Positions 7,721 to 25,353 of a stretch of DNA of 50,367 bases are shown here, one piece after another. Location: contig CM097883.1 of assembly GCA_044892505.1 (NCBI GenBank), positions 391,468,234 to 391,518,600 on the forward strand. The letters run 5' to 3'. Each line of letters opens with the position of its first letter. Position 1 is the first letter of the stretch. The translations under genes were made by a program, and so were the position numbers. The stretch comes from Schmidtea nova (lineage: Eukaryota). The notes under the pieces were generated by a model. The model had not been told where the DNA came from and searched no databases. It saw only the letters and a list, made by a program, of their open reading frames with translations.

Positions 7721-8338
7721 ATTAAAGTTAAAAAAAAAAATTATCAAATTGAAGCAAAAATGAAAATTTTACTCAGTAAAGTCGTTTATTATTTTTCAAA
7801 AAATTCCTCTGTTTCCCTCCCTCGAATGCCAATTTCCTACCCCTTATACAACATTCTGATAACCACAATATTGCGCTACTTTGTCAAATTAAACTTTACA
7901 ATTACCTAAAAAATTAAACTACAAATCAACAATAAACTATAAAAAATTAGTAAACTACATATTAGAAATATTTTATTCGTTATTTTCTAATTGAGTACTA
8001 CCTCTTTAAACATTAATATCAAACTGCAAACCCGCACCATACTTTTATCAAAACTAATGTAAGATAAAATAAAGGAAATCCCCTGCAGTTATGTGTCACA
8101 CAATTTGTTGTATAACATACAACATTTTGTTGAATCAAGGTAAATTAAATTCGGCTACAAAAAGTTTGCGTAAAGATAGAGTCAGTAGTTTTTAGAACTT
8201 ATTTTTAATAAATTAAAAGTTCTGCGCAGGAGTTTGAGAAATGGTTACTAAATTTGGAAACCATTTTGTTTCAAATGTTTAGTGTTAAAATGTCAAAATT
8301 GAGTAGGTAGATGTGTGGAGCCGGGAACAAAGACATTA

Positions 8339-8500
8339 TGACTCATGCGTGGGCGGAAAAAAAAGAACAAAGACCCCCCCCTCCCCCCGGGGGGGGGTAG
8401 AAATTTTTTTTTTTGGTGAGTCATCGATGAGTCATCGATGACTCATCGATGAGTCATACTTTTTTTTTTGATGAGTCATCGATGAGTCATCGATGAGTCA
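8339..8500 (+). promoter_or_regulatory. Array of AP-1/TRE-type sites in the left TIR (11-bp unit TGASTCATCGA)
   Basis: TGA(C/G)TCA at 8339, 8417, 8428, 8439, 8450, 8472, 8483 and 8494. Function is inferred from the motif only. Confidence 0.6.
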
Positions 8501-8523
8501 TAATTTTTTTTTTCAAAAATTTT

Positions 8524-8726
8524 TTTCGCGCCAAATTTTTTTTTTCAAAAATTTTTTTTCGCGCCAAATTTTTTTTTCAAAAATTTTTTTTCGCGCCAAA
8601 TTTTTTTTTCAAAAATTTTTTTCGCGCCAAATTTGTTTTTCAAAAATTTTTTTCGCGCCAAATTTTTTTTTTCAAAAATTTTTTTCGGGCCAAATTTTTT
8701 TTTTCAAAAATTTTTTTCGCGCCAAA
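8524..8726 (+). promoter_or_regulatory. Tandem array of 7 E2F-type sites (TTTCGCGCCAAA) in ~32-bp T/A-tract units, left TIR
   Basis: Six perfect copies plus one CGGGCC variant. The 12-mer matches the overlapping double E2F site of mammalian DHFR promoters. Confidence 0.65.
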
Positions 8727-9184
8727 TTTTTTTTTCAAAAATTTTTTTAATTAGTCCAAATTTTTTTTTACTAATTTTTAAAGACGAATTTTTTTTAAGA
8801 TAAATTATTTTTAGTCAAATTTTTTTTTAAAAACAAAATTCGAGTAATCAAAAATATTTACAACAGGTGTGCAAACAAAGACATTTTTTTTATGTGTGCA
8901 TGTTTAATTAATTATTATTTGTCAAGTATGAAGCTTTTGCACTTCAAAACCATCACAGAAGAGGTTCTGCTTCCAGGGTTCTGATCGCAATGTTCTGCTT
9001 CCAGGGTTCTGATACTAAATGTTCTGCTACATTTAATTATTATTTTTTCAAACTAAAGACATTGCAACACGCGTGCAACATGAACAAAGACATTGCAATA
9101 CACATGCAAACTAAACAAAGACACATGCGTGCAACACATAAACAAAGACATTAAAAAGACAAAATTTATTTATAAATATATCGT

Positions 9185-9950
9185 NNNNNNNNNNNNNNNN
9201 NNNNNNNNNNNNNNNNNNNNNNNNNNNNNNNNNNNNNNNNNNNNNNNNNNNNNNNNNNNNNNNNNNNNNNNNNNNNNNNNNNNNNNNNNNNNNNNNNNNN
9301 NNNNNNNNNNNNNNNNNNNNNNNNNNNNNNNNNNNNNNNNNNNNNNNNNNNNNNNNNNNNNNNNNNNNNNNNNNNNNNNNNNNNNNNNNNNNNNNNNNNN
9401 NNNNNNNNNNNNNNNNNNNNNNNNNNNNNNNNNNNNNNNNNNNNNNNNNNNNNNNNNNNNNNNNNNNNNNNNNNNNNNNNNNNNNNNNNNNNNNNNNNNN
9501 NNNNNNNNNNNNNNNNNNNNNNNNNNNNNNNNNNNNNNNNNNNNNNNNNNNNNNNNNNNNNNNNNNNNNNNNNNNNNNNNNNNNNNNNNNNNNNNNNNNN
9601 NNNNNNNNNNNNNNNNNNNNNNNNNNNNNNNNNNNNNNNNNNNNNNNNNNNNNNNNNNNNNNNNNNNNNNNNNNNNNNNNNNNNNNNNNNNNNNNNNNNN
9701 NNNNNNNNNNNNNNNNNNNNNNNNNNNNNNNNNNNNNNNNNNNNNNNNNNNNNNNNNNNNNNNNNNNNNNNNNNNNNNNNNNNNNNNNNNNNNNNNNNNN
9801 NNNNNNNNNNNNNNNNNNNNNNNNNNNNNNNNNNNNNNNNNNNNNNNNNNNNNNNNNNNNNNNNNNNNNNNNNNNNNNNNNNNNNNNNNNNNNNNNNNNN
9901 NNNNNNNNNNNNNNNNNNNNNNNNNNNNNNNNNNNNNNNNNNNNNNNNNN
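9185..9950. other. Assembly gap inside the Polinton (other gaps: 3530-3890, 5901-6355, 30339-30467, 36865-37653, 39436-39628)
   Basis: Runs of N. Confidence 1.
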
Positions 9951-10166
9951 TATTAATAATAATATTAATAATAATAATAATAATACTATAAATCAAAATA
10001 ATAAAACACTTAATAAAACATATAATAATAACTTATAATAACTTATAAAAATAACTTATCAAAAAGAAAAAAACTAATAAAAATAACTTATAAAATATTA
10101 ACAAAAAAAAAATAATAATTTCTTAGTTTTAATTGATTGCGCAATTTATTACAATCAAAATGTAAT

Positions 10167-10182
10167 GGCCCTAAAGAGGACC
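10167..10182 (-). terminator. Histone-mRNA-type 3' stem-loop 2 (GGTCCT-CTTT-AGGGCC) downstream of polB
   Basis: 6-bp stem and 4-nt loop with histone-like flanks (AAC...ATTACA). An AATAAA follows on the same strand at 10150-10145. Confidence 0.6.
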
Positions 10183-10436
10183 GTTAATTCGTTCACATTC
10201 TGATTCGGCTTTCTGAATATTTTCATCATTTGTTTCTGTGTATTTTCCTCATTTGTTTCGTATGATTTTTAATCATTTGTTTCGGATTATTTGTTTCTGA
10301 ATATTTTCATCAACATTTCTTTCTCTTTATTTTTATCAATTGTTTTGGATTATTTTCATCATTTGTTTCTGTAATCTTTTTTTTTCTTCATCTGTAAGCT
10401 AAAATTTAGTAATATTTGTTTACAATCATAAATTGT

Positions 10437-10452
10437 GGCCCTGAAGAGGGCC
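10437..10452 (-). terminator. Histone-mRNA-type 3' stem-loop 1 (GGCCCT-CTTC-AGGGCC) 143 nt after the polB stop
   Basis: Fits the GGYYYT-YTYN-ARRRCC consensus and is followed by ACAA, in sense orientation to polB. Confidence 0.65.
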
Positions 10453-10594
10453 GATTGTTCATTCTCATATCTTTTTTTTTTTTTTTGGTTTTTTGATTTT
10501 CTTTTTTTTTTTTTTGGTTTTTGATTTTCTTTTTCTGGTTTTTTAACTTTTTTTTTCCATTTCATTCTTATCATCTTTCTCCTTGCCATCATAA

Positions 10595-10658
10595 TCATGC
10601 GAAATAATCCCGAGCCGTCGGGTCATAGAAAGCGTAGGGGTCATCTTGTTGTTGAAGC

Positions 10659-10692
<34 letters not shown>

Positions 10693-13600
10693 CTTGGACA
10701 TCCCTATCACCTACAAATATAGTGGTGTCACCCCCCATATAATGACCATACGCCAAACTTTTATTTTTTTCCACCCAGTTCCTCTTATCGTCCCTACAAG
10801 ATAAAGCCCTCTTATTACTTTTAATACTGAAAAGTTGGTGGTTTTTCGAAGTAATGCGGAACTGGGGGACATTGTATATCTTATCATTAAGGTAACAGTC
10901 AAGATAAGATTGATGTGTGAGACCTGCATCTTTCAAACAGATCCCCTTGGCTTTCATGCAGGCCTCGTCTCCCATAAGACTATAGCACTTAGGTCTCAAG
11001 AAAACCCACTCATCATACAGTAGACCCTTATTCTCATCCTTAAATTTGCCAATCACAGAATCTAGGGTCCTACTATACAATGTATGACGAGTGTCGTAAT
11101 TAGAGGTATCCAAAAGCCTATCTCGAATCATGGCGGTCAAAAGGGTGTTAAGATCAAGATGTTTGATTTCCAAGAAGAAGGAATCAGTATCCCCAGCAAC
11201 GATGTTAATTTCGCAGTTGAAGTCGTTACGATATTTTTGTAACTCTTCATACTGCAGCTGGTACATACGAAGTTTGGATAAATCCAGTACGGTTTGTCCA
11301 ATGTAGCTGGGTCTATCCAAACATACTGATTCCTTCTGAAGCAATACGGAGATGAGATCATTGTCGATTTTTGTAGTTTTTTTGAAATTAGCTTTTGACG
11401 TGTAAGTCAGCAGTTTTTGTGCCGAGTTACACAGTCGTAAATTTATGCGTTTTTTTAAGTTCTCTACGGTTTTGCCGTAGAGACTATTATTTAATAATTT
11501 GTAAAAATTTTTATCGAGCTTGTTGGTAGCAGCCGCTCGTAAACTGGTGTTTATGTTTATGTAATTAAAAAATATTTTTTCTTGCTTAAATTTAATAGCC
11601 CTGTGGACTTTAGTTACAATTACACCGATTTTTATAAATAGTTGCAGAAGCCGCCAATGAAGAACATAATTCTTCTTTGGAAGATGCGTTAGCAACAGCT
11701 TCTCAACCTTGGATCCCGGTGCACACATCTTTTCAGCGGCAACTGGAAGATCATCCAGTTTGTCGTGAATCGATGCCGGAATTTCCAAATCCACTTCTAT
11801 GGTGTAACCATAATGAAGTGTATCGAGATTTCCCGATGTGCACTCACAAACGATTTGATTTAATAATTGGTCATCAGTGACCCACTCAAAATTACCACAA
11901 GGAAGGGGTTGGCTTAAGGCCCACCCGTATAAATTATTTATGTCAATATATAGTAATGCGGTATCCGGGCTCGTCTTGACATAATGTTTATTGACAAACG
12001 TTAGTCCGCCGCGAATACCGCCCTCGAAAAAGTTATACATCTCCATATCGGTGAGGAGCTCGATAGGAGAGTCAAGTGTTAATAAAGCGGAACTCCACGA
12101 CATGCCGGGAATTCCGAGAAAATTTAAAGGCTCAAGCCTGTTATGGTTAATTGATTTTAATCGAAATTGCTGAAAATAATCAGCTAACAAAAACACATCC
12201 AATTTTAAATAAACCATCATGTAATCGTACAGTGATGTACATGATGTTTCTTGCCAGATTTTATGGGCAGCAGCATACTCGACAGCAGTTATATCTTTCC
12301 ATTTCGGGGGTAAACACAAGGTTGATTTTAAAACTTCTAAAGAAGTGGCAGCGTCGTAAGGAAAAATGCCCTTGGCAGTGACTATAGTGCCTCGAAATTC
12401 AGATTGTGTTAATGGTAAGCTAGTGAGTGTTTTTACTTCGTTATTTAGAGACTCACTTACAAACTGATAAGAGTCAATAAATTTTACGGTCAGGCTATCG
12501 ATGTACGCGAAAAGGCTAAGAAACTTTTCACTTGTCAAGGGTATACAACTAATATTCCAACTGTTGTATTTTGAAAGACCATATTTTAAAATATGGTGTA
12601 AATCGTAACCCTTCAAGTTATGAAAGATTACGGGCAAAGAGTGTCGTATTTGCCGTGACTTGTTACACTCTGAGCAGGCTGCTCCAATATAAAGACCGGT
12701 GAAATGGTCGTGATCCCTAACAGGTGCCACTAAAAGTTTTTTGCATAAATAACAATTAGTGCTATTATCAAATTGTCGCTGTTGGGTCGCAGTGATAGTC
12801 ATGCGTTTTTGATAATTTTTATAGTAATAGGGTGTCACTATATACCGACTGATTGACTCAATTTCTCTTAAGAATTGATCAACACAGTCTAACCCTACAA
12901 AAGATTTGTAAATTCTCACCCCAGAAAAGTTGTTAATGAGAAGGAGACCTGCGGCAATAGGAAGATGTTTTTGGTGGTGAACAGTGTCTTTCGGTAATAT
13001 TGCCTCGAAATCCGCATATATTACAAAAGGAGGAGTTACTGTTTTTTTCCAATCAGTAAACTCCAAAAATTTATTTTTGGGTAATGTGTACAGTGTGGTA
13101 CCCAACTGATTTTTGTTACAAAGACCCTTATGACGATTAAAGGCTTCGTCGTTCCTAAACCCATTCAAGCAACGAGGGCACCATTGACTACAAATCCTAA
13201 CTGGGGTGATTGTGCTGTTTCGGCAATTCAAAAAGCGATTCAGATCGGTAATCGCAAGATAATGAAAATTATCTTTTTTCTCCAAGAGAAGCAAATTTAT
13301 GGGAATAGCCCCGACTACTTTACTACGGTAGACTATATCGATAAAGGGGTGTTTAAGGACGACATTATCATCATTGTCGTTGTCGCTTATATCAATTTGG
13401 GCCTTTTCGTCATATGTAAGGACATTTATACTATAGCCACTGTTTTGTCTTTCAAATTTTTTAATATTTACTAATTTCATGGGCATGTCGTTGGGGTCAA
13501 AAACAAGTTGGGAAATGTCATAAGAAGTAGTCCTATGCCTGTATTGGCGTTCAATACTATTGTATTTAACTACTGCTAAAAAGCTATATAAAAAGCAATA

Positions 13601-14221
13601 GGTGTCATTATTTTGTACATTAACTAAACAACTTAAATTTTTTAAGGTATTCGGCGTTTCGATATAACTGCTGCCGCTCAATCGACTAATTTCAGAAAAT
13701 TTAGTCACTAAAAAACTAATATATTCGATTTTGGAGATTGTCCAATTACTCCCCTTTTCGTTAATCTGGACAATCTTCTCATTTAAATTAGTGACACCTT
13801 CCTCAATAAAGGTATCACTCCACTCTCTGGCAGAATTTGAGATGACGAAAGATTGTAGTTGATCATCTTTCTCAAATTCTACCTTGAGACAAAATTGAAT
13901 TTTTACAGATTTTAAATTAATAATATAAGATTTTAGTTTTTCTAATAATATATCCGGCACAGAGACCGTTTTTAATAATAAATTAGATACATCCATTTTT
14001 ATAATAAAATGGGTATCGTTCAAGTCGGAAGTAACTTCAACAATACCCATTCCAATTTGATTATTATTATTATTTAAAATATTAACATAATCGTCAAATT
14101 CATCATCATTGACGATTATGTCATCGGCGGATATAATACTGATATTAGTACTTTTATTATAAATAAGATCATCCTCATCATCACTGATGAGGGATATAAT
14201 ATTATTATTATTATTATTAAT

Positions 14222-14284
<63 letters not shown>

Positions 14285-14823
14285 ATTTTCATCTTCATCA
14301 TCGCTGATGTCGATTATTATAATTTTTTTAGGAACTGAATCCATTAATGTTTGGTTTTTTCTTTTATTTATATTTGATGTATTGATTTTATTTGTATTTT
14401 GTATATTATTTGTTTTAATAGTATTTTGTAATTTATTTGTATCAATAGTATTTTGTAATTTATTTGTATCAATAGTATTTTGTAAATTATTTGTATTAAT
14501 AGTATTTGTTGTATTATTATTATTATTTGTATTTATATTATTTGTTGTTTTATTTCTAATAGGAGTATTTGATAAATTATTAGTTTTATTCGAAATATAA
14601 TTTTTATATAACGAATTAAAAAGTGATTTTTTAGATGGTTGGTATTGGGAAAGGTGTGACCTATGAAAGATATAAAATTCCCTATAAGAAGTAGTTTCAA
14701 TAATTTTACATTTAGGGCATAGGAGGTGGGTGACACCATTATATTTATATGAATAATACTTTTCCATAATGACATGACAGTCACTATGGAAAGTATTATT
14801 GCAAAAATTTTGGTATATTGAGC
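10595..14823 (-). CDS. polB: Protein-primed family B DNA polymerase (pPolB), main exon; ATG-only ORF 10595-14767, 1390 aa
   Basis: Exo I YADFE, Exo II FHNLKGYD, Exo III YLKLD, Pol A YIDINNLYG, Pol B KLLNNSLYGK, Pol C GDTDS, and KAKG. Also an EndoVII-like RDHDHFTG..CSECN insert and an OTU-like DTYCF...HY region. The frame stays open upstream to a CAG acceptor at 14826-14824. Confidence 0.97.
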
Positions 14824-15870
14824 CTGAATATTGAAAAAAAAAATTAAAATCAAAGGCTACAATTATAAAATTAAAATATTATGAGTAAAAATTAAAATAT
14901 TATTAGTAAAAATAAATATTTCAAATAAGAGATTATTACCTATTAAGTTAATGATTAATATATTTTTATAACAAAAAAAAAATTAATATTTTGATAAATA
15001 TTTAAAATAATAGTTAATTGTTAAAAAATAAACATTTACCTATTATTTTAAATATAATCAAAAGTTTTATATATATATATTATTTTTAAAACCTAATCAT
15101 AAAAAATAATATTATTTTTATATCATTATAAAATCATCATTAAAATATTAAAAATTGTTCATCAATATAATATATTCTTCATAAAAAATTTCAGCATAAT
15201 AATATCATCTTCGTCATAAAAAAAAATTGAGCGTAATAATATCATCTTCATCATAATAAAAAAAAATTGAACATCATCATATCATCTTCTTCATAATAAA
15301 AAAATTGAACATCATCATATAATCGTTTTTTTTTTTTTGTCATAAAAAATTTCAACTACATATTTTTTATTCATAAAAATAATTTTATATATATATTAAA
15401 AATAATAAAAAAATATTAGCATAAATATATAAAAAATAATATTATTAATTTCATATAAATTCAACATTATTTCATCATAAAAAATTTGAGCATTATTATA
15501 TCATCTTCATCAAAAGAAAAAATTGAACATCTTCATATAATATTTTTTTTTATCATAAAAATTTTAACATTATATTTTTTTCTTCATAAAAAAATTTATC
15601 TTTTTCTTCATAATAAACATTTCTTTTCATTTCAAATTCATAATATCATAATTTTTTTCTTCATAATAAAAATATATCTTTTTTATTTTCATTTCAAATT
15701 CATAATATCATATTTTTTTTTCTTCATAATAAACATTTATTTTCTTCATAAAAATAATTTTATCATAAAAAATTAATTAATTTATTTAAAAATATTCCCA
15801 TAGGAATTAATTAAAAATAATAAAAATATTATTATTATTATCATATACAAAAATAAAAATAAAAAATTAC

Positions 15871-16257
15871 ATTTGCCAGAGTTTTTTCCAATAAAACTCT
15901 GCATATTGGACCATCCGTTATAAGCATCATTAATCGGGACATCGTTACTCGGCATATTGGTACTCGAGACATCGAAATTCAGGACATCATTATCATCACC
16001 ATCATCATTAATCGAGGCATCTATATCAACAACATTTCCTAAAAAATTGAATAATAAAGAAAATAATAATTTAATAATATTAATTTTACTATTTAATCTG
16101 TTTTGATTTTGGATTCTTAACGATGTTCCTACCATATTGTTGGATAAATTAACACCTAGAAATAATATATTATAAATATAATAAAATAAAAATTAATAAT
16201 TTTACTTTTTAGACCTCCGGCGATCCTTGTTGGTAAATTAATATTTAAATTTTGCAT
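15871..16257 (-). CDS. Three upstream coding exons (16257-16206, 16155-16090, 16038-15871), probably the 5' exons of polB
   Basis: GT-AG introns of 50 nt (16205-16156) and 51 nt (16089-16039), all phase 1. A donor at 15870 is phase-compatible with the polB acceptor (T+GC = Cys), giving a 4515-nt frame (1504 aa + stop). Confidence 0.6.
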
Positions 16258-16325
16258 AATTGCTTTAGAAATTGATTAGAAATTTGTTATAAAATTTGAA
16301 AGTAAAAAGTGACGAAATAATTCAA

Positions 16326-16476
16326 GTATATACTATATAAAGGTGAATTTTATTAACCGACCAATCAGAATCGAGATAGGATAGGTAAATACATGCACAC
16401 ACATACTGCACACATAATATACCTTTGTTTATGTGTGTTTGACGTCACGATATTGCTTTGTATCGTGACAAAGACA
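16326..16476 (-). promoter_or_regulatory. Putative polB promoter: TATA-like, CCAAT, CRE and ACAAAGACA elements
   Basis: TATATAG at ~16339-16333, CCAAT at 16361-16365, TGACGTCA at 16440-16447 and ACAAAGACA at 16468-16476, all upstream of the ATG at 16257. Confidence 0.5.
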
Positions 16477-16615
16477 TGACATGTGATTATCACGCATTGA
16501 TCACGCACTGGTCATGCCTTTGTGATGAAAATAATAATATTTATAATTAATAATAATAAAAATAATAATTAATAAAAATAATAATAAAAATAATAATAAA
16601 AATAATAAAATACAT

Positions 16616-17017
16616 TTATTGCTTTAAATAATCAACAACAGCAGACAAGCACCCTTTATAGGCACACATGCAATGATCTTTATAGGGACATGAAATGTTT
16701 TCAGGAACATATTCAACATCTTTAAAATTATATTTAATTAATCTTAATTTGGGGAAATACTTCTTCAAAACATACATCTTTTCATGATCTGTTACATAGA
16801 AAATAGCTCCTTTATCTGTAATATCATCCATTATACATTTTGGGCAAAAATAATCTTGTCCTTCAAACGATTCTATACGATCAGGCCATAAAGATAAATC
16901 ACTGTATATATAATACTGAGGTGTGAATATATTATTGACATTCATAATACATAATTCCTTAATTGTTGTTCCACCCATTTCATTATATCCATAAAAATCA
17001 ATAAAATAACAAGACAT
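16616..17017 (-). CDS. Small conserved Polinton accessory protein (133 aa), possibly DnaQ/DEDD nuclease-like fold
   Basis: N-terminal IDFYGY...IKELCI, central FYV..HEK..LK and C-terminal CP..H..CA resemble a recurrent Maverick protein family as I recall it. The fold assignment is tentative. Confidence 0.55.
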   Translation of the reverse strand: MSCYFIDFYGYNEMGGTTIKELCIMNVNNIFTPQYYIYSDLSLWPDRIESFEGQDYFCPKCIMDDITDKGAIFYVTDHEKMYVLKKYFPKLRLIKYNFKDVEYVPENISCPYKDHCMCAYKGCLSAVVDYLKQ

Positions 17018-17049
17018 TTTTTCAAATAAAGTTTATTAAAATAAATTGT

Positions 17050-17427
17050 TTATAACATTGATTTCAACCATGCAAGGCAATGTTCACCACAAGTGATTGT
17101 TAAAGGATGCTGATACCGAATTCTATTATACACAATAGGTTTACCGATAGTTTGTAGTTTTCGAACAAGTAAATTCGGATAATAATATCCAAATGGATCA
17201 AATACATGTATTCGATCTGGTTTCACATAAACTGCAATCCAATGTTCACCACCCAATGTAGATGTCTGAGTATTTACAATGATGGCTTGATTCATTTTCA
17301 AATAAGGTATTTTATCGAGAGGAAATACTCCAATAAATTGATTTCCCAATAGTTTTTTACCTTGTTGTAATACCTGAAAAGAACTAATTAAAAATAAATA
17401 ACTAATCAATTAAAAATCTTACTCCAT
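17050..17427 (-). CDS. Adenain-like (family C5) maturation cysteine protease, 2 exons (17427-17423, 17383-17050), 112 aa
   Basis: GEHW, FDPFG and Q..TITCGEHC supply His, Asp, Gln and Cys. A 39-nt GTAAGA..TAATTAG intron yields the N-terminus MDSFQVL..FIGVFP. A TATAAA lies at 17465-17460. Confidence 0.9.
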
Positions 17428-17467
17428 AATAATAATAATAAAAATAATAACTTTGATCATTTATACT

Positions 17468-17538
17468 GTTTGAGCTCTGCTCAAACCAGTAATGTTTAAG
17501 CTTTGCTCAAACTAGTAATGTTTGAGCTCTGCTCAAAC
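17468..17538. repeat. Three 26-bp-spaced copies of a 19-bp palindrome GTTTGAGC-TCT-GCTCAAAC between MCP and protease
   Basis: Copies at 17468-17486, 17494-17512 (variant) and 17520-17538. The last overlaps the MCP stop codon. Confidence 0.9.
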
Positions 17539-18753
17539 CAGTATTGTTCGATTGGCAGTAATTTGAACTTCATTTTCAAAAACTCCATAAATAACTACAT
17601 GAACCGGTTCATCAATAGGTTTTGCAAACTTTATATCCAGTCGTAAATTTCCGTTTTGAGGGATTTGGCTTTGATTCAAATCAAAATCGGGAGCCAGAAC
17701 AAATGTAAAGAATGGATAACTAGATTTAAATTCATCTAGACCAATACCACAATTCAAGTTTTTATCCAAATAACCTAGATTTCGGACAAGACTTTGCATA
17801 TATGATGCACTAAAATTATCATTTTCAAAATCCTGGGTATATGTTTCACGATAATCGGTATTTTTCGACAATGTTAATGAAGTCACATTAAAGTGTTTGA
17901 ATGTAGATGTTGACTCAGTATAAGACCCATTATATTGATTTTCGGATTGAAAAGCCACAAGAATGAAATTAGGCATTCGTCTATCTCCAAATATTTGCTC
18001 CTTGTAAAATGACGATGCCCCTTTACCGATAGCAAACGATACGATTTCTTTGGATTTTAATGGATAAATTGCATGTTTTTTATTTAAACCAATTTGATGA
18101 CCGGCCAATACTGAAGAATCACATCGAACTCTTCTTACCATTAATTTTGCATCAACTATTTGGATAACTGGTTTTCCAGCTACCGATTTCAATGATAATG
18201 CAGAATCAGATCGCTTCAATCTAATATGTACATTAACTCCGGGAAGTAAGTATTTAGGTTGATCCATAAAATCCAGTTGTAATGACGAACACATGTTGAA
18301 AAGTTTAGATCCTTTAATCCATTTTTTTCGATCGTCAGCTGAACCATATCCCATTGGAGTAAGACATGTTTCTTTAGCATCATTCGTATAATTTAAAATA
18401 GTTTCGATTATTGCCTTGTGTGCATATGTATTGTTTCCACCCTCGATTTTTATATTATTAAATCCGAGAATTACATCTTTGAAAAGTGTATGAAACAGGT
18501 AATTATTAGGAACTACATCACTCGCATCGGCTAGAGCTTTTTTATCTTTATCTACAACTTTGATTGTAACGGACAATAATGTATCGTTCAAATCCAAATA
18601 TTCGGTTTGAGAACCATTAATGTAAAATTCAACATCATTTCTACTATCTGTAATTGAATTCATTGGAAACACATCTTCAAACGCCCCATATTCAATAACT
18701 GCTTGAGGTGATGGTCGATCAAAAAGACATAATTCAGATTTACCGCAAATCAT
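17533..18753 (-). CDS. Major capsid protein (double jelly-roll, Polinton PY), 406 aa
   Basis: CGKSELCLF..P..IE, VEFYI.G..EYLDL..T.L, LDFMDQPKYLLPGV and GNLRLDIKF are typical Polinton MCP motifs. Confidence 0.93.
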   Translation of the reverse strand: MICGKSELCLFDRPSPQAVIEYGAFEDVFPMNSITDSRNDVEFYINGSQTEYLDLNDTLLSVTIKVVDKDKKALADASDVVPNNYLFHTLFKDVILGFNNIKIEGGNNTYAHKAIIETILNYTNDAKETCLTPMGYGSADDRKKWIKGSKLFNMCSSLQLDFMDQPKYLLPGVNVHIRLKRSDSALSLKSVAGKPVIQIVDAKLMVRRVRCDSSVLAGHQIGLNKKHAIYPLKSKEIVSFAIGKGASSFYKEQIFGDRRMPNFILVAFQSENQYNGSYTESTSTFKHFNVTSLTLSKNTDYRETYTQDFENDNFSASYMQSLVRNLGYLDKNLNCGIGLDEFKSSYPFFTFVLAPDFDLNQSQIPQNGNLRLDIKFAKPIDEPVHVVIYGVFENEVQITANRTILV

Positions 18754-19133
18754 TCTTCAAATATAGTTCCATGACCTTTCATTCGTTTGTTTATACGCTT
18801 TCGTTTACGTCTTGGTCCTACCGGTACAGATTCCGGTTCCTTATTTTTTGTAAACATACTTGTAATTGTAGGAAGCATTTGTGTTACAGCAGGTATAGCT
18901 TTATTAACTGCGGCCAAAGCATTGGTTTTCAATGACGGTAATATTTTATTATCTTTCATGATAACGTCCTTGGCAGTATTCATTCCGAAATTACCTAGTC
19001 GTCTAAGAATTGGAAGTGCAAATCTCCCAATAGTTTTCAACCAACCTGATCCATACTGTTTACCGACAAAATACGGTAATTCGCCACCAGTTTGGCTATC
19101 ACTGTACATTGAAACTATATCGGGATTACTCAT
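18750..19133 (-). CDS. Putative virion core/membrane-lytic precursor protein, 127 aa
   Basis: QTGG and QYGSG glycine motifs, then an amphipathic WLKTIGRFALPILRRLG helix and a basic RRKRKR tail. Lies between mCP and MCP with overlapping start/stop codons. Confidence 0.7.
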   Translation of the reverse strand: MSNPDIVSMYSDSQTGGELPYFVGKQYGSGWLKTIGRFALPILRRLGNFGMNTAKDVIMKDNKILPSLKTNALAAVNKAIPAVTQMLPTITSMFTKNKEPESVPVGPRRKRKRINKRMKGHGTIFEE

Positions 19134-20169
19134 CGTTTTTTCGAAAATGTAGAGTTAAGTGAGTTTTTGAATCTTTTGGAAATTTTATAAATCTTCCACT
19201 GTCATCCCGGATATTTATTTCTATATTGTTTATACAGGATGTTGAAACAGGTAAATACATTGGATTTTCAACTTGTATTTGAACAATTTCATCTGGCTCG
19301 TATTTTTCAATCCATATAGATTTTAGTAAAGGAACCAAGGAATCACCAACAATAATGGGTTCGATAATGTTTGTATATACGAATAATTGCTGATGAAGTT
19401 TAGATATTTTCGGTTGACGAACACCAGAAATAATATTTTTATCGGTAAATGTATCCTTATCTAATCCCAATGTATTGACCAAGTATTTATCAAATCTGAC
19501 TTTATTGATTTTTTCTTTGAGTTTGAATTTAAACAATTTATTTAATTCGACAACTGTAAAAATATCCGAACAATTATCGCTAATATATTTCTGTAATTCA
19601 TCTAGATGCGTTATATACAACTCCTCCTTGAAGGTGAATACATGTCCTTCTTGACGATCATACGATATTTTAAAAGTAATTATTTCTTCATCGTTACTGG
19701 CCAAGTTTTGCATAACTTTGAATTCACATTCTTCTTCATTACATATCATTGTCAGTTTATTACTTCCCATTCGTTTTGCTACATCAAGATCGTTAAATGT
19801 AATTGTATACGGAACAACATTACACGTGAGAATTATTCTTCCACTTCGTTGCCACATTTCGATATCCGGATCAATTGTGTGAGTTGGAACATTCAGAAGG
19901 CCACTATTATTATATATCGAGAAAAATGCATTTGCAACAGTTGTTTTCGTAATATAGTAATATATTTTACAATAACTATAATATGGAAAAGGATGGTAAA
20001 CAAATGTAAAATCCATTAGAGCAACTTCCCAATTTCCGTTTAAATAAATAGGATTAGGTAAATTCACCATGAATTTACTTGCGGTATTATCTGGATGGAT
20101 ATTCGGACAACTATTACTCGGTAAAATAGTGTAAAAATTCACTTTACTAGATTTTTTGACGAGATCCAT
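19126..20169 (-). CDS. Minor capsid protein (penton, Polinton PX), 347 aa
   Basis: FYTILPSNS..PDNT..F.V.LP.PI.L.G.WEVAL and LFVYTNIIEP..VGD..VPLL..Y.PV..IEINIRD. Confidence 0.92.
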   Translation of the reverse strand: MDLVKKSSKVNFYTILPSNSCPNIHPDNTASKFMVNLPNPIYLNGNWEVALMDFTFVYHPFPYYSYCKIYYYITKTTVANAFFSIYNNSGLLNVPTHTIDPDIEMWQRSGRIILTCNVVPYTITFNDLDVAKRMGSNKLTMICNEEECEFKVMQNLASNDEEIITFKISYDRQEGHVFTFKEELYITHLDELQKYISDNCSDIFTVVELNKLFKFKLKEKINKVRFDKYLVNTLGLDKDTFTDKNIISGVRQPKISKLHQQLFVYTNIIEPIIVGDSLVPLLKSIWIEKYEPDEIVQIQVENPMYLPVSTSCINNIEINIRDDSGRFIKFPKDSKTHLTLHFRKNDE

Positions 20170-21183
20170 GATGGTTCTTTATATCCATGCCATTTGACAT
20201 AGTATTGTTTATCCTTACCCACCATTTTAGTCTTCAAAATCTTTTGAATTCTAAATATCGTAGGTTTAGGAATAACTTGTAATTCTTGTTCGTAGAATTT
20301 GCCGCTGATTATATTGTTATCAGAGTCACGAATAGTATACATGACAGGATTCTGCACTGTGTTGACTTTCGATATTTGATATACCTCATCACTCCAATTA
20401 TTATCAAAATTTTTAACGAATGGCGATGTACTAATCTTGCTAATTCGAACATGATCATCAACTTTATATTTTGGTTTCTTTACTTTCACTTCACTCACAA
20501 TATTTTCAGTATCAACTACTTCTGCCGGTTTCCTACCATTTATACCCCGATGAGCACTATGATTATAACTATGAATCAATTGAGGTAAGACATTAATCCA
20601 GGTTTTATTGCCTTTAAAAACAAAGTATTTTTTCAATCGATCACGCAAAGTTCGATTAAGTCTCTCGACATGAGCGGCTTTGAATTGTGAGAATACCGAA
20701 TAATGATTTATTCCCTTGATAACTTCCTTGACTTTACTGTTGTAAAACTCCTTTCCTAAAAAATATTAAATTTATAAATTTAAATTAAAATTTACCCAAA
20801 TCGGTTTGTAAATTAGTTGGCCGATCCTTTTTCATCATTGTCTTGATAGCAATTGCCATATCATTAGCAGATTTTGATTTTACTCCAATTGCTCGAGCAA
20901 ATCTACTGTAAACATCAATACACGTTAAAATATACTTGTACCCCTTGTTAATTTTGGAATACGGAATCATTTCCATCAAGTCCATTTGCCACAAATCATT
21001 GATTCTATATGTTTTATATGCTCGAGTTGGAAACCGTTTCAACATCGGCTTGTTTAGACTGTATGCAAGTTGCCCCGATAACCAACTTTGTGTCTGTTGT
21101 TTCGACTTCTGTGCTTTTTTCCTTAGCTTTTCGACTCCACCGAAACCGGCGTCGTCTTTTGGGTTCGTCCAGATCTTCTCCAT
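20139..21183 (-). CDS. int: Retroviral-type (rve) DDE integrase with C-terminal chromodomain, 2 exons (21183-20796, 20755-20139), 334 aa
   Basis: WQMDL, QTDLG|KEF and VERLNRT form D-D-E once the 40-nt GT-AG intron 20795-20756 is removed. Total 1005 nt in frame. YYVKWHGY..SW chromodomain. Confidence 0.95.
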
Positions 21184-21238
21184 TACAACAAGAAGATTTA
21201 AAGTTTAAATTTAAATTAGGTAATGATTGACCCATTGT

Positions 21239-21748
21239 TTATGACTTTCTTTTTCCCAATAAACCAGCACCTCCCAATAAAGATAATGCTAATGGTAACA
21301 ATGCTGCGATAAAACCACCTTGTTGTTTATATATTACTTTGCGCATAAGTTTTTTATTTTTTGAGTTTACTAGCGACAACAATGGTTTTTTATGTTTGTT
21401 CAAAACACGGCGATTAGATGGAGTTAGATTTATTTTACCTCGCACGACTTTAATTAAAATAGAGAGTAAATCATCGATGACGTAACTAGGAAACGATTGA
21501 AGAATACCCATTCTTCTAACGGAAGGGGCTTTAAGTAATGCATTAAAAAACGGTAAACTACGATGATGTGTTTGTTTAGCATTAGATTTCAAATTATTTT
21601 TGGGAATATTATCCATAAGTATTTTCTTGGATTTCTTTCTTGATTTCTTTATAGATTTCTTTGTAAATAGTTTCTTTGTTTTCTTTCCCGCTTTCTTTGT
21701 TCTAGCCTTTATCAATGGCTCAAACTTTACTCGAGATTTCATTAACAT
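21239..21748 (-). CDS. Putative basic DNA-binding core protein precursor, 169 aa
   Basis: Lys/Arg-rich N-terminus. C-terminal QQGG-FIAALLPLALSLLGG hydrophobic segment with protease-site-like GG motifs. Confidence 0.7.
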   Translation of the reverse strand: MLMKSRVKFEPLIKARTKKAGKKTKKLFTKKSIKKSRKKSKKILMDNIPKNNLKSNAKQTHHRSLPFFNALLKAPSVRRMGILQSFPSYVIDDLLSILIKVVRGKINLTPSNRRVLNKHKKPLLSLVNSKNKKLMRKVIYKQQGGFIAALLPLALSLLGGAGLLGKRKS

Positions 21749-21768
21749 GATTACGATTGCAAACAGAA

Positions 21769-22392
21769 TTAACTTTGTTTATAAACCATGGCTCCTTCAG
21801 GGTTAAAAATATCGGTTCTAACCCGTAAATCATCACTACATTGTTGAGTAAAATCAAGGAAAATATATCCATGAGGAGATTTTGTAGCATCTTGAAAGGC
21901 TTCAATCAAAAAGTTACGATTAGAAGGATAAGCTTGTCTTGCCAGAAAATCAATAACTGTTGCATCTCTAGGATTTTTAAAAACAACAAGATATTGAACA
22001 TTTAAATTACGAGTTCGATGACTACCGCCCTGATGAAATAAATTCTGAGTTATAAAAATAACAGTAACACCTTTATGTCTACTGATTTTCGTAAATAAGT
22101 TATTGAAATCCTTTTCTTTATTTGCTTCTTGATACAAGTCGTCAATGATAATCACATCACCATGTTTTAATCTAGATGACCAGTTTTTATCGAAACCTTT
22201 AATGATTGTCATTTTTATTTTACAAAACTGATCTTGTGTCATTCCACTTTCGTCGTCAGCACCCCTATGCCAATAAATATTATTAAATTTTGACTTGAAT
22301 AATTTCGATTGCAATAATTTACAAACAAATAAAGTTTTTCCACTCCCGCTCGGACCAACAATTTGAAACACTGCATCATTTCTTAATTCCAT
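21769..22392 (-). CDS. FtsK/HerA-superfamily (A32-like) genome-packaging ATPase, 207 aa
   Basis: Walker A GPSGSGKT, Walker B IIIDD, SRH..VIFITQNLF and N.QYLVVFKNPRD. Confidence 0.95.
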   Translation of the reverse strand: MELRNDAVFQIVGPSGSGKTLFVCKLLQSKLFKSKFNNIYWHRGADDESGMTQDQFCKIKMTIIKGFDKNWSSRLKHGDVIIIDDLYQEANKEKDFNNLFTKISRHKGVTVIFITQNLFHQGGSHRTRNLNVQYLVVFKNPRDATVIDFLARQAYPSNRNFLIEAFQDATKSPHGYIFLDFTQQCSDDLRVRTDIFNPEGAMVYKQS

Positions 22393-22485
22393 ATTTAAAA
22401 ATTATATTTTCTTAATATTATTGTTTATATTTGTTTTAAATACCTGTTCTCAAAGTAATTATTTCATTTAAAAATATTTTCAGTA

Positions 22486-22953
22486 ATGATTAGAAACATT
22501 AATTACAAAGGTAAGACAGATGTATCACACATGAAATTTCCAAATGGAAAACCCCAGCAAATTGTAGATCGAAGTGGAAAATACCCAATAATATACTTTA
22601 AATCAGGAAGATATAGAATAATGGGATGCAGGGAATTTATTAGTGACGAACAAGTTGAGTTTTACGATTTAAAGATACAATCGATAACTGTAACTGCGGA
22701 TTTAGGATTTATTTGTAATTTGAATGAATTATCGAAATTAATACCATGTGTTTACGAGCCAGAATTATTTCCAGCTTTGAGATATATCAAATATAATCCC
22801 ATGTGTGTAAATATATTTGCAAGCGGGAAATTAGTCATATTAGGATTAAAAAACAAAGACTATAGTACTATAGTTGATGATATTATTTACGATATAAAAT
22901 CAATTATAGAAGATAAAGCCTTTATTGATTTCATACTAACATGTGACTCATGA
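22486..22953 (+). CDS. TATA-box-binding protein (TBP)-like protein, 155 aa
   Basis: Two TBP repeats: RNIN..IIYFKSGRYRIMGC and KIQSIT..DLGF..L..L..YEPELFPALRY..NIFASGKLVILGLK, compared with canonical YEPELFPGLIY..LIFVSGKVVLTGAK. Confidence 0.88.
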   Translation: MIRNINYKGKTDVSHMKFPNGKPQQIVDRSGKYPIIYFKSGRYRIMGCREFISDEQVEFYDLKIQSITVTADLGFICNLNELSKLIPCVYEPELFPALRYIKYNPMCVNIFASGKLVILGLKNKDYSTIVDDIIYDIKSIIEDKAFIDFILTCDS

Positions 22954-23128
22954 CTGCAATATCGATGCATTAGAAATGCACGATTCTGATTGGCTCTGTG
23001 TGTATCGATAGAATAAAGACATGTTGTGCATGCTTCATTCTGATTGGTTCATTATGTATGTTTCAAATCATGTGTGTTTCTTTGATATATATACTATGAA
23101 CAATCTCACATAGTTTATATTCACAATA

Positions 23129-23792
23129 ATGTCTCTTACGCAAACACTAATTAAAAGCCGTAAGGATTTTTAATTATTTATTTATTAAAATTAATATTAT
23201 TTCTTTTTTAGAAAAGTTGATGAACGTTATTTACAGAAAGCTTGAGGAACTGTTCCCAAATCTTATGCCAGCTCTGGTCTATACGGCTCCTGAGATGTTC
23301 CCGTACAAGATAATGGTCTTGACGGGAATCGACATCAATCAGATTGTGCTCGATCACATGACGAGCCAGAATACTGATCTTCCAAGGGTACCCGAGCACA
23401 TTATCTGTGCGTACCAATGCGGGAGCTGCGTGGAACGCATTCGTCAATTTAATATTTGGGTTTTGCGAAACTCATTGAGATTATACGAAGTCCAGCAAAT
23501 GGACAAAATCGATGAGGAAAAGGAAGATGATGAACAAGTCAAGGAAACATGGCCGAACTCGACTCCGGAACCGAATGATGATGAAGATGATCAATCAAAA
23601 AATGATTGCTCAATGGAACATGCACCATCTCTAGATGGTCCGTATCCATCGAAATCACCTGATTGTTCAGAATCTCCACATTCACCCGATTGTGCCGAAT
23701 GCCATCGACAGGCTGATGGTGTTGATAATGATGATGAAGAAGAAGAAGAAGAACAAGAAGAAGAAGAAGTAAAAGAAAACGATGAACAATAA
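23129..23792 (+). CDS. Hypothetical protein with acidic C-terminal tail, 2 exons (23129-23159, 23212-23792), 203 aa
   Basis: The ORF-track start is a TTG just after a TTTTTAG acceptor. A 52-nt GTAAGG..TTAG intron restores an ATG start in phase (612 nt). GC content is raised, and CCAAT and TATA-like elements lie upstream. Confidence 0.7.
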
Positions 23793-24290
23793 TCTGATGT
23801 GTATGTGTGTGTTTAATGTAATTAGTTTTTTTCTTTTAGTTATGTTATTTTAGTTTAATAAAAGTTTATTTATTTATTTTAGTTTTTTTATTCATTTTAG
23901 TTTTTGTTTTCATTTAAATAATAGTAATAGTTTTATTTTTTTTTTTTTTTATTAAAACATTTTAAGTAGTAGTTTTTTAATTAACTGTATATAAAAGTTA
24001 AAAAAAAAAAATTTTTTATTAAATACTTTTCAGAAAGAAAGTAGTAGTAGTAGTATTATAAAATAAATAAGAACATTAGGAACAGAACCTATTCTGTGTT
24101 GGTTTTGATATGCAAAAAGCTTCATACTAAACATATACTAATTAATTAAACATGCACGCATACAACAAAAATATTGCAATACATGTGCATACTGTGTGCA
24201 AAACAAATGCATGAATATGATTGGACAAAGACATCCAGTAATCAGTATAAATACAAAGACATTTTATAAAATATTGTCACAATTTACAAC

Positions 24291-24707
24291 ATGCAATCAC
24301 GAAAAGAAAATCTAGATATAAGCGAAGAAAAAATATATCAGACTGAGGTAAAACCAGTTCAGATGTACTATGACAGCCGACTTTATTTTTTGGTTAATGA
24401 AATACCGTATCGATTATCATTTCCGGTAAAGTTAACAAAATCTTTATATGACAGTCTTGCTATAATTATTTCCAAAGCAGATATTATCGCATTAAATCGA
24501 TTATTTTCAAAGATCAATGTTAATTTGACATGTAAAGAAACAATGTACATCAATAACCGAAAAACTCGGTTTCATGATGCTTTTCAGACTATTGATTTCA
24601 TGGATCAAGAACACTGGTTCGTTACAGTTATTATTCAAGGGTACAAGATTGATAAAAAAGATGTTGTTACTCCGATTTGGAGAGTTGACAATGCAAGATA
24701 CGCATAA
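24291..24707 (+). CDS. Hypothetical Polinton protein, 138 aa
   Basis: Clean ATG ORF with TATAAA at 24246-24251, an ATTGG box upstream and AATAAA ~10 nt after the stop. Confidence 0.7.
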   Translation: MQSRKENLDISEEKIYQTEVKPVQMYYDSRLYFLVNEIPYRLSFPVKLTKSLYDSLAIIISKADIIALNRLFSKINVNLTCKETMYINNRKTRFHDAFQTIDFMDQEHWFVTVIIQGYKIDKKDVVTPIWRVDNARYA

Positions 24708-24771
24708 TTGTTTTTTAATAAATATTTTAGTATGAACAAATTTAGTTTTTATATTAGTTTTTGTTTTTAAA

Positions 24772-25353
24772 ATGAAATTAATTATAGTTATTTTATTATT
24801 ATGTGTTGACAATACTGAAGGAGAACAAGCTTTGGAGGATTGTCAATCATCACATCCGTTTCGAAAACAAGATAGTACTTGCGCGAGTTATAACGATATA
24901 TGTCTTTACTCAAACATTGAATGCAATCAAATTAAATTACAATGTAATCAATGTCCTTCCAAAAATAATGTGATTAATAATGATATTGAAAAAATGATTA
25001 ACAAAATAATTATGAAAATAGTTGAACGATTAAAATGTATAAATCAAACTATTGTTAAAAAAGAATATGAAGTCAGATACCAAAATCAAACAGTTGAAAA
25101 CGAAAAAACATCAATTGTTTTACATTATATAAGTTTATTTATATTAATAATAATACTGATGTTATCGGCATCCATACGGCTGGAGAAGATTTCAAATATT
25201 CCAAAGAATAATATTCCGACAAATACTAGTATTCCGATGAATAATATTACAATGAATAATATTCCGATGAATAATATTCCGAGTAACAATTCAGATGTAA
25301 ATAATTTTGAAACTAAATTTTGTACACGTACACAACGATATATTTATAAATAA
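24772..25353 (+). CDS. Type-I membrane protein with signal peptide and 6-Cys ectodomain (TNFR-CRD-like), 193 aa
   Basis: Hydrophobic N-terminus, C-x12-C-x6-C-x6-C-x6-C-x2-C, two NQT sequons, TM segment ISLFILIIILMLSASI and an NNIPMNN-repeat tail. Confidence 0.7.
   Translation: MKLIIVILLLCVDNTEGEQALEDCQSSHPFRKQDSTCASYNDICLYSNIECNQIKLQCNQCPSKNNVINNDIEKMINKIIMKIVERLKCINQTIVKKEYEVRYQNQTVENEKTSIVLHYISLFILIIILMLSASIRLEKISNIPKNNIPTNTSIPMNNITMNNIPMNNIPSNNSDVNNFETKFCTRTQRYIYK

What the first reader, a model, noticed from the sequence alone, without database searches (positions are those of the whole stretch)
10145..10452. Two histone-type 3' stem-loops downstream of the viral DNA polymerase gene
On the polB sense strand, 143 nt after the stop, lies AACAATC-GGCCCT-CTTC-AGGGCC-ACAA. 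About 270 nt further lies AAC-GGTCCT-CTTT-AGGGCC-ATTACA. Both have the 6-bp stem/4-nt loop geometry and GGYYYT..ARRRCC sequence of replication-dependent histone mRNA ends bound by SLBP. A C at the first loop position is known from nematode histone hairpins. Both are followed ~7-10 nt later by a shared TGATTGTAA (possible downstream element), and an AATAAA follows the second. These are GC-rich islands in very AT-rich DNA, and I found none after the other viral genes. A viral polymerase mRNA using the histone 3'-end/SLBP pathway would be confined to S phase. I am not aware of this being described for Polintons, but I cannot search the literature.
Basis: partly seen in the sequence, partly recalled or inferred. 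Interest (0 to 1): 0.9.

Follow-up and report, generated by a model that had tools for sequence, protein, structure and literature searches.

The report
Histone-type RNA hairpins in a Polinton
An integrated virus-like element (Polinton/adintovirus type) carries, just after its DNA polymerase gene, two copies of the RNA hairpin that normally ends histone messages, so the element may borrow the cell's histone-message pathway; relatives do not share the feature after their polymerase genes and no expression data exist.

Summary
Two 6-bp-stem/4-nt-loop hairpins lie on the polB-sense (minus) strand at 10437-10452 and 10167-10182. They are the only two in 50 kb. Both match Rfam Histone3 (RF00032) at 31.5 and 21.5 bits, below the gathering score of 34. 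The 16-nt hairpins are 15/16 identical to the C. elegans histone hairpin and 13/16 to the Drosophila one. Flanks resemble both types.

They sit inside an exactly bounded 18,053-bp Polinton (8302-26354, 6-bp target duplication, terminal inverted repeats of at least 883 nt). The first starts 142 nt after the stop of an intact polB.

A third copy of the same ~48-nt module occurs in a related element (L003), 20 nt after the stop of an unrelated orphan ORF. In two of the three hairpins one stem pair is U·G, which pairs only on the sense RNA strand.

Thirteen relatives (47-61% polB identity) with usable sequence after polB lack any such hairpin. The downstream motif is not purine-rich. The second hairpin follows no ORF. 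The host's own histone hairpins could not be obtained.

Best reading (about 0.5): a portable histone-type 3'-end module acquired by these elements and acting on sense transcripts. Main rival: an inert relic of captured host sequence. No paper found describes this.

The parts
10437..10452 (-). Hairpin 1 (HP1): 6-bp stem, 4-nt loop CUUC, all Watson-Crick pairs
   Evidence: 15/16 identical to the C. elegans histone hairpin
10412..10467 (-). HP1 module: Rfam Histone3 match (10412-10457, 31.5 bits) plus the 47-nt stretch (10421-10467) that is 85% identical to L003:1934-1980
10420..10428 (-). Shared downstream motif TGATTGTAA, 8 nt after HP1
   Evidence: (family D8)
10167..10182 (-). Hairpin 2 (HP2): 6-bp stem with a U.G third pair, loop CUUU; pairs fully only on the minus strand
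10142..10187 (-). HP2 Rfam Histone3 match, 21.5 bits
10149..10157 (-). Shared downstream motif TGATTGTAA, 9 nt after HP2
10145..10150 (-). AATAAA hexamer overlapping the end of the second downstream motif
10210..10380 (.). Array of about 23-nt repeats between the two hairpins; no ORF of note
10453..10594 (-). A-rich 142-nt stretch between the polB stop and HP1, without AATAAA or ATTAAA
10595..14767 (-). Protein-primed family B DNA polymerase, 1390 aa, single open frame. N-rich low-complexity N-terminus and an Endonuclease VII-like zinc module
   Evidence: PF03175, E 1.1e-26
8302..26354 (.). Whole Polinton/adintovirus-like element, 18,053 bp including 766 N, flanked by the 6-bp target duplication AAATTG
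8302..9184 (.). Left terminal inverted repeat (runs into the N gap)
25335..26354 (.). Right terminal inverted repeat
17050..17409 (-). Adenovirus-type cysteine protease (Peptidase_C5)
17533..18753 (-). 406-aa ORF, 64% identical to the 409-aa ORF at the same position in L001; probable major capsid protein (by position and size only)
20139..21183 (-). Integrase (rve core plus chromodomain), broken: reads in two frames, one frameshift-type break
21769..22392 (-). A32-type packaging ATPase
22486..22953 (+). TATA-binding-protein homologue carried by the element

Best explanation
The two hairpins are genuine histone-type 3'-end elements carried by the Polinton. Each is a roughly 48-nt module: a 5' flank, a 16-nt hairpin and a downstream motif. 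The module looks portable, because the same module ends a different gene in a related element. In the window HP1 would be read on polB-sense transcripts. The host stem-loop binding protein would bind it, and the transcript would be cut a few nucleotides after the stem. That would give a non-polyadenylated polB message handled like a histone message, and so tied to proliferating or DNA-replicating cells. HP2, with its AATAAA, would act as a second, fail-safe end. Shown here: the sequence, the strand, the family resemblance, the position, and the recurrence in a relative. Inferred: binding, cleavage, and coupling to S phase or the germ line. The module was most likely copied from host histone genes.
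For: Rfam Histone3 matches only at these two places, sense strand only (31.5 and 21.5 bits). L003's copy scores 23.9 bits. HP1 and HP2 are each 15/16 identical to the C. elegans histone hairpin, and the 5' GAAC...AAC and 3' ACAA flanks resemble it. The fly H3 substrate shares the AAUC 5' flank, the GGUCCU arm and the ACAA 3' flank. [quoted passage not shown] HP2 and L003 have U.G at stem pair 3, so the stem closes only on the sense RNA strand. Among the three copies, 14/16 hairpin columns and 9/15 and 12/17 near-flank columns are invariant, against 2/13 and 3/21 further out. These 47 nt are the only similarity found between the first 5.4 kb of L003 (which holds its hairpin) and the window. In L003 the hairpin starts 20 nt after a stop codon, the canonical distance. 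No AATAAA or ATTAAA lies between the polB stop and HP1. The order hairpin, conserved motif, AATAAA at HP2 mirrors C. elegans histone genes.
Against: Both window matches are below the Rfam gathering score. Thirteen related elements with at least 269 nt after polB, and 126 kb of the closest loci searched at E<=10, have no such hairpin. HP1 is 142 nt from the stop, whereas the metazoan median is 30 nt and hairpin conservation falls with distance. HP2 follows no ORF and lacks the ACA flank. The downstream motif is U/A-rich, not purine-rich. No compensatory double change supports the stem; there is one one-sided change among three sequences. The host, its histone hairpins, its SLBP and its U7 are unknown. 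There are no transcript data. The integrase is broken, so this copy may be decaying.
Confidence: 0.5

Rival explanations
1. Inert relic. The hairpin modules are leftovers of host histone-gene 3' flanks, or of a small cargo cassette like the one in L003, captured into the subterminal region and then duplicated. They lie after polB by accident of position and have no role in polB expression.
For: The feature is sporadic. It is absent after polB in 13 relatives. In L003 it lies in a segment of about 2.1 kb that the sister element L004 lacks. In the window the hairpins sit in repeat-rich non-coding DNA, and HP2 has no ORF. The distance from the polB stop is atypical. The integrase is broken.
Against: All three stems are perfect, and a roughly 48-nt core is far better kept than its surroundings. 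Both window copies and L003 are in the sense of the upstream ORF. L003's copy is at the canonical distance behind an intact ORF with a TATA-like box. No histone coding remnant lies nearby.
Confidence: 0.3
2. A different kind of hairpin signal. The hairpins act as a general transcript-end or terminator hairpin, or as a DNA-level site near the element's end for replication, packaging or integrase binding. The likeness to histone hairpins is convergent.
For: The position is subterminal, about 1.9-2.2 kb from the left end. HP1 is almost palindromic, and the model folds draw longer outer stems between the flanks and the downstream motif. The neighbourhood is rich in repeats.
Against: There is no counterpart near the right end, and the region is not part of the terminal repeat. 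U.G pairs make HP2 and L003 strand-specific. Identity of 15/16 to a real histone hairpin plus matching flanks is hard to reach by convergence. The outer stems are not shared by L003.
Confidence: 0.12
3. Chance G+C-rich palindromes in A+T-rich DNA.
For: Short hairpins are common. A scan of viral contigs with the 16-mer gave 41 hits that are all chance matches, mostly in G+C-rich contigs and in the one recurrent A+T-rich group checked inside an ORF of a phage-like contig.
Against: There are two copies 270 nt apart with homologous flanks, and a third in a relative. Shuffles gave 0 of 100 with two or more matches. Divided by the 4227 families searched, the window-wide Histone3 E-values correspond to about 8e-9 and 4e-5. 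The blastn E-value for the module match to L003 is 7e-8.
Confidence: 0.03

Closest known systems
Replication-dependent histone mRNA 3' stem-loop (Rfam RF00032), C. elegans type (CDL-1/SLBP site)
   Same: 6-bp stem and 4-nt loop. Stem GGCCCU/AGGGCC and loop CUUU are the worm letters; HP1 and HP2 each differ at one of 16 positions. C at loop position 1. 5' GAAC...AAC and 3' ACAA flanks. A conserved motif and then AATAAA downstream.
   Different: It follows a viral-type polB (or an orphan ORF in L003), not a histone gene. It is 142 nt from the stop. The downstream motif is TGATTGTA, not AATCC. Scores are below the Rfam gathering score.
Drosophila histone H3 pre-mRNA 3' element (stem-loop plus U7-binding downstream element)
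   Same: AAUC before the stem, a GGUCCU 5' arm (HP2, L003), a loop ending UUC (HP1, L003), ACAA after the stem, and a GAUU-containing stretch about 9 nt downstream.
   Different: The first loop base is C, not U. The third stem pair is C-G or U.G, not U-A. The downstream stretch is not purine-rich. Pairing with U7 was not testable.
Polintons/Mavericks of animals, adintovirus type
   Same: Protein-primed polB, rve integrase with chromodomain, adenovirus-type protease, A32-type ATPase, long terminal inverted repeats, 6-bp target duplication, 18 kb. Cargo such as TBP here and Bcl-2 in relative L001, as listed for adintoviruses and their kin.
   Different: No histone-type 3' end is mentioned in the adintovirus paper, the nematode Polinton paper, or any paper found.
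Hairpin-defined mRNA 3' ends of giant viruses (mimivirus 'hairpin rule'; recalled from my own knowledge, not checked here)
   Same: A virus marks transcript ends with hairpins after its genes.
   Different: Those hairpins are A+T-rich, differ from gene to gene, occur genome-wide and precede polyadenylation. Here a single host-type, SLBP-type hairpin occurs at one gene.
U7 snRNA acting on LTR12 retroelements in human cells (PMC11417402; abstract only)
   Same: A link between the histone 3'-end machinery and a mobile element.
   Different: That is repression through U7-complementary motifs in retroviral LTRs. No stem-loop ends a coding message there.

Membership tests
Histone 3' UTR stem-loop (Rfam RF00032) | Score at or above the curated gathering score (34 bits) | tested here: not met
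   31.5 bits (HP1), 21.5 (HP2), 23.9 (L003); no hit at 'gathering'
Histone 3' UTR stem-loop (Rfam RF00032) | 6-bp stem and 4-nt loop, fully paired | tested here: met
   18 of 18 cells are standard pairs; minimum-free-energy folds keep the stem
Histone 3' UTR stem-loop (Rfam RF00032) | [quoted passage not shown] | tested here: met
   Present in HP1, HP2 and L003; the criterion is as stated
Histone 3' UTR stem-loop (Rfam RF00032) | U at loop position 1 (general metazoan state) | tested here: not met
   C in all three copies; C is the C. elegans state
Histone 3' UTR stem-loop (Rfam RF00032) | A-rich 5' flank and AC(C/A) 3' flank | tested here: inconclusive
   HP1 has CAAUC / ACAA and L003 has AAACC / ACAC. 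HP2 has UUAAC / AUUACA, so its 3' flank is not met
Histone 3' UTR stem-loop (Rfam RF00032) | Lies shortly (about 20-60 nt) after the stop codon of a replication-dependent histone gene | tested here: not met
   It follows polB at 142 nt (HP1), follows no ORF (HP2), and follows an orphan 162-aa ORF at 20 nt (L003). None is a histone
Histone 3' UTR stem-loop (Rfam RF00032) | Purine-rich downstream element complementary to the host U7 snRNA | tested here: inconclusive
   A conserved motif lies 8-9 nt downstream but is U/A-rich. The host U7 is unavailable. Nematodes use another route
Histone 3' UTR stem-loop (Rfam RF00032) | Bound by SLBP; transcript ends 3-6 nt after the stem without poly(A) | not testable with these tools
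   No RNA or binding data; the expected end position is taken
C. elegans-type histone 3' module (hairpin - AATCC - AATAAA) | A conserved 32-36-nt block around the hairpin, then an AATCC core, then AATAAA | tested here: inconclusive
   The hairpin and parts of the flanks match. AATAAA follows HP2 only. AATCC is replaced by TGATTGTA
Polinton/Maverick (adintovirus-like) | Protein-primed polB plus rve integrase | tested here: met
   PF03175 E 1.1e-26; PF00665 34.7 bits (cut-off 32.6); the integrase is broken once
Polinton/Maverick (adintovirus-like) | Capsid-maturation protease and packaging ATPase | tested here: met
   Peptidase_C5 26.7 bits; Pox_A32 29.5 bits
Polinton/Maverick (adintovirus-like) | Terminal inverted repeats, 6-bp target-site duplication, 15-20 kb | tested here: met
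   Repeats of at least 883 nt, AAATTG on both sides, 18,053 bp
Polinton/Maverick (adintovirus-like) | Double-jelly-roll major and minor capsid proteins | not tested
   The 406-aa ORF is conserved in place with relatives, but no fold or profile test was run

The most novel reading that the evidence does not exclude
A lineage of animal Polintons (adintovirus-like elements) uses a portable copy of the host histone 3'-end module as an expression cassette. It is placed behind the replication polymerase in one element and behind an accessory gene upstream of polB in another. Their messages would then be non-polyadenylated, SLBP-bound and restricted to replicating (S-phase or germ-line) cells. These would be the first non-histone protein-coding messages, and the first of a virus-like element, to end in a histone stem-loop. 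If the host is a nematode, the same module might also draw the message into the CSR-1 small-RNA route that processes worm histone messages.
Probability: 0.3. Interest if true: 0.85.

Novelty: new variant of a known kind. Interest (0 to 1): 0.66.

Why it matters
[quoted passage not shown] A virus-like element that places the same signal behind its DNA polymerase would be a new way for a mobile element or virus to time its replication gene to host DNA synthesis. It would also show that the histone 3'-end module can be moved between genes in nature. The claim can be tested directly with descriptive data: the host's histone gene flanks, 3'-end reads, and poly(A)+ versus total RNA. If the hairpins prove to be inert relics, the finding still documents capture of host histone-gene flanks by Polintons.

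Tried and rejected
- **Viral-contig scan with the 16-mer** gave 41 hits, all chance matches. Most lie in G+C-rich contigs. The one recurrent A+T-rich group (checked in L046) lies inside an ORF of a phage-like contig.
- **Viral-contig scan with the 3' arm plus downstream motif** gave 0 hits.
It returned 80 loci, none with the hairpin.
- **Exact look-up of the window's polB** found nothing on record. The closest protein is 61% identical, so conservation within the element's own family could not be tested.
- **The L003 162-aa protein** has no Pfam family, no homologue among 5.8 billion proteins, and no match in the window.
- **Are the hairpins part of the terminal repeat or mirrored at the right end?** No.
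- **Is there a gene between the hairpins?** Only tiny ORFs and 23-nt repeats. A 79-codon lysine-rich frame across HP1 is a translation of A-rich DNA.
- **Other Rfam hits in the region** (snoRNA-like, sRNA-like) are weak, far below their thresholds, and arise from the TGATGA-containing repeats.
- **Host identity.** A flanking hAT transposase relic is closest to spider and scorpion copies (80-87%), while the hairpin is closest to the worm type. No flank similarity to the ERZ25039515 contigs was found.
- **Extended outer stems** seen in folds of HP1 and HP2 are not shared by L003.

Full report
**1. The observation**

The window is A+T-rich, about 27% G+C. Reading 9900-10700 shows two G+C-rich hairpins on the minus strand.
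- HP1 lies at 10437-10452: GGCCCT-CTTC-AGGGCC.
- HP2 lies at 10167-10182: GGTCCT-CTTT-AGGGCC.

Each is followed 8-9 nt later by TGATTGTAA. An AATAAA overlaps the end of the second motif.

With up to three mismatches the pattern occurs nowhere else in the 50 kb. The expected number is 0.07, and no shuffle in 100 gave two matches. A neutral scan for any 6-bp GG...CC stem with a 4-nt loop finds only these.

Rfam finds nothing at curated thresholds. With E-value reporting, the Histone3 model RF00032 matches exactly these two places, minus strand only. The scores are 31.5 and 21.5 bits against a gathering score of 34. The window-wide E-values over all 4227 families are 3.3e-5 and 0.18.

**2. The surroundings**

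The hairpins lie inside an exactly bounded Polinton.
- It spans 8302-26354, which is 18,053 bp including a 766-nt run of N.
- Its termini begin with AG.
- Its terminal inverted repeats are at least 883 nt long.
- A 6-bp target duplication, AAATTG, flanks both sides.

Its genes are as follows.

| Gene | Coordinates | Evidence |
|---|---|---|
| Protein-primed polB, 1390 aa, intact | 10595-14767, minus | PF03175 E 1.1e-26 once the N-rich N-terminus is cut off; |
| Adenovirus-type protease | 17050-17409, minus | |
| 406-aa capsid-position ORF | 17533-18753, minus | |
| Integrase with chromodomain | 20139-21183, minus | reads in two frames, one frameshift-type break; |
| A32-type ATPase | 21769-22392, minus | |
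| TBP homologue | 22486-22953, plus | |

This is the adintovirus-like kind of Polinton. Relatives carry TBP, and one carries Bcl-2, as described for adintoviruses and their kin.

polB is the last gene of the leftward block. Between its stop and the HP1 stem lie 142 A-rich nucleotides with no AATAAA or ATTAAA; the first such hexamer is 264 nt after the stop, beyond HP1. Between the hairpins there are only 23-nt repeats and no gene. Beyond HP2 come A+T repeats and then the N run, which I left as it is. The hairpin region is not part of the terminal repeat and has no mirror at the right end.

**3. Comparison with real histone hairpins**

All comparison sequences were supplied by tools.
- The C. 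elegans histone 3'UTR alignment (PMC1924863, additional file 1) reads ...CCGAACCCAAACG-GGCCCT-CTTT-AGGGCC-ACAAAT..., then an AATCC core, then AATAAA.
- HP1 and HP2 each differ from that hairpin at one of 16 positions. L003 differs at two.
- The 5' GAAC...AAC and 3' ACAA flanks are also alike.
- The Drosophila H3 substrate printed in PMC3884669 reads ...AAUC-GGUCCU-UUUC-AGGACC-ACAAACCAGAUUCAAUGAG.... It shares the AAUC flank with HP1, the GGUCCU arm with HP2 and L003, and the ACAA flank. Identity is 13/16 for HP1 and HP2, and 14/16 for L003.

The module therefore looks like an ecdysozoan-type histone 3' element. The two features named as diagnostic in a recent survey are present in all copies: G-C at stem pair 2 and U at loop position 3.

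**4. Strand and structure**

In HP2 and in L003 the third stem pair is U.G. The stem closes fully only on the polB-sense strand; on the other strand this pair is a C-A mismatch. That argues for an RNA-level, sense-strand element.

With three sequences there is only this one-sided change and no compensatory double change.

**5. Relatives**

The polB has thousands of homologues, the best at 61% identity, almost all from ENA or JGI assemblies. I fetched 8 loci by exact look-up, 80 from metagenome contigs and 14 from viral contigs. Together with the window this is about 0.84 Mb.

- A hairpin scan and a search for the 3' arm find one further copy only, at L003:1950-1965, minus strand.
- That copy reads AAAACC-GGTCCT-CTTC-AGGGCC-ACACATTATGATTGTA and scores 23.9 bits on Histone3.
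- It begins 20 nt after the stop of a 162-aa ORF that has a TATA-like box. The ORF has no Pfam family and no homologue anywhere.
- It lies in a segment of about 2.1 kb that the sister element L004 lacks.
- The 47-nt module is the only similarity found between the first 5.4 kb of L003 and the window (85% identity, E 7e-8).
- Across the three copies, 14/16 hairpin columns and 9/15 and 12/17 near-flank columns are invariant. Further out the figures are 2/13 and 3/21.

Rfam at E<=10 finds no Histone3 match in 126 kb of the 17 closest loci.

**6. Interpretation**

The data fit a portable module of about 48 nt of histone 3'-end type. These elements have acquired it, most simply from host histone genes, and it sits in sense orientation behind an ORF.

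I put about 0.5 on the module being used, meaning:
- SLBP binds it;
- the message ends a few nucleotides after the stem, as shown for worm histone messages;
- HP2 plus AATAAA serves as a second end.

Depending on the host, the cut would be U7-dependent, or, in nematodes, would follow the CSR-1 route on polyadenylated precursors. Coupling to S phase or to the proliferating germ line is inference. In C. elegans adults histone expression is confined to the germ line.

The main rival, at about 0.3, is an inert relic of captured host sequence. Its support is the sporadic distribution, the atypical 142-nt distance, the ORF-less HP2 and the broken integrase. A DNA-level or unrelated hairpin role gets about 0.12 and chance about 0.03. 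Both fit poorly with the strand-specific U.G pair, the lack of a right-end mirror and the flank identity.

**7. Host**

The host is not identified. A hAT transposase relic in the left flank (4345-5184, minus) is closest to spider and scorpion copies, at 80-87% over part of its length. The hairpin is closest to the worm type. The comparison with the host's own histone hairpins is the key missing test.

**8. Literature**

- No paper holds Polinton or Maverick together with a histone stem-loop or SLBP.
- The adintovirus paper and the nematode Polinton paper do not mention such hairpins.
- The exact hairpin letters of the window occur in no paper. The worm variant occurs as a histone hairpin only in the C. 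elegans paper.
- Histone messages are described as the only metazoan protein-coding mRNAs ending in a stem-loop (abstract of PMC6303110).

**9. Conduct**

- The N runs were not filled.

Noticed in passing
window 8415-8502 and 26130-26238: Each terminal repeat holds 7-9 tandem 11-nt units, GATGAGTCATC, whose core TGAGTCA is an AP-1/GCN4-type palindrome (identified from my own knowledge). There are 27 matches against 0.5 expected. These arrays produced the weak miRNA-like Rfam hits.
   Followed up: partly
window 8376-8398 and its mate near 26262-26284: A run of C followed by a run of G (C8-T-C6-G9) forms a strong palindrome near each end of the element, just outside the 11-nt repeats.
   Followed up: no
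window 8502-9078 and 25523-26130: The terminal repeats are largely built of tandem units of about 32 nt (T-run, CAAAAA, T-run, CGCGCCAAA).
   Followed up: partly
window 20139-21183 (-): The integrase (rve core plus chromodomain) reads in two frames, a single frameshift-type break. polB, the ATPase, the capsid-position ORF and three further ORFs matched (16616-17017, 17533-18753, 19126-20169) read in one frame against relatives.
   Followed up: partly
window 22486-22953 (+); L001:12382-12759 and 12985-13431; L003, L004, L142: The elements carry a TATA-binding-protein homologue. L001 also carries a Bcl-2 homologue and L005 a RING-finger ORF.
   Followed up: no
window 13900-14767 (-), N-terminal third of polB: Long asparagine-rich runs and two hydrophobic-then-acidic stretches (IIIIDISDDEDE, IISLISDDEDD) that look like SUMO-interaction motifs. 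The L003 162-aa ORF has a similar IIIDLCGEED stretch.
   Followed up: no
window 12650-12800 (-), polB residues 656-704: An Endonuclease VII-like zinc module (PF02945, 22 bits, just below cut-off) sits inside polB. It is shared with most relatives.
   Followed up: no
L003:1036-3208: A segment of about 2.1 kb that is absent from sister element L004. It carries the orphan 162-aa ORF with a TATA-like box and the histone-type hairpin. It lies next to tandem repeats of about 300 nt (3030-3770).
   Followed up: partly
window 4345-5574 (-) and 27146-27574 (-): Relics of hAT-family transposases (GTF2IRD2-like) in both flanks. The left one is closest to spider and scorpion proteins (80-87%).
   Followed up: partly
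window 10405-10475 and 10135-10205 (-): In model folds the downstream GAUUGU stretch pairs with an AAUC-containing stretch upstream of each hairpin, giving a longer outer stem (z -2.8 and -3.3). L003 does not share this.
   Followed up: partly
L001, L003, L004, L143 versus window, L005: polB is inverted relative to the capsid/integrase block in some relatives and co-oriented in others, so the polB module has flipped during the family's history.
   Followed up: no
ENA records ERZ2272806 (NODE_2, 16.3 kb) and ERZ2272490 (NODE_182, coverage 66): The closest relatives are among the longest or best-covered contigs of their assemblies. This may mean free or highly copied elements in those samples.
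   Followed up: no
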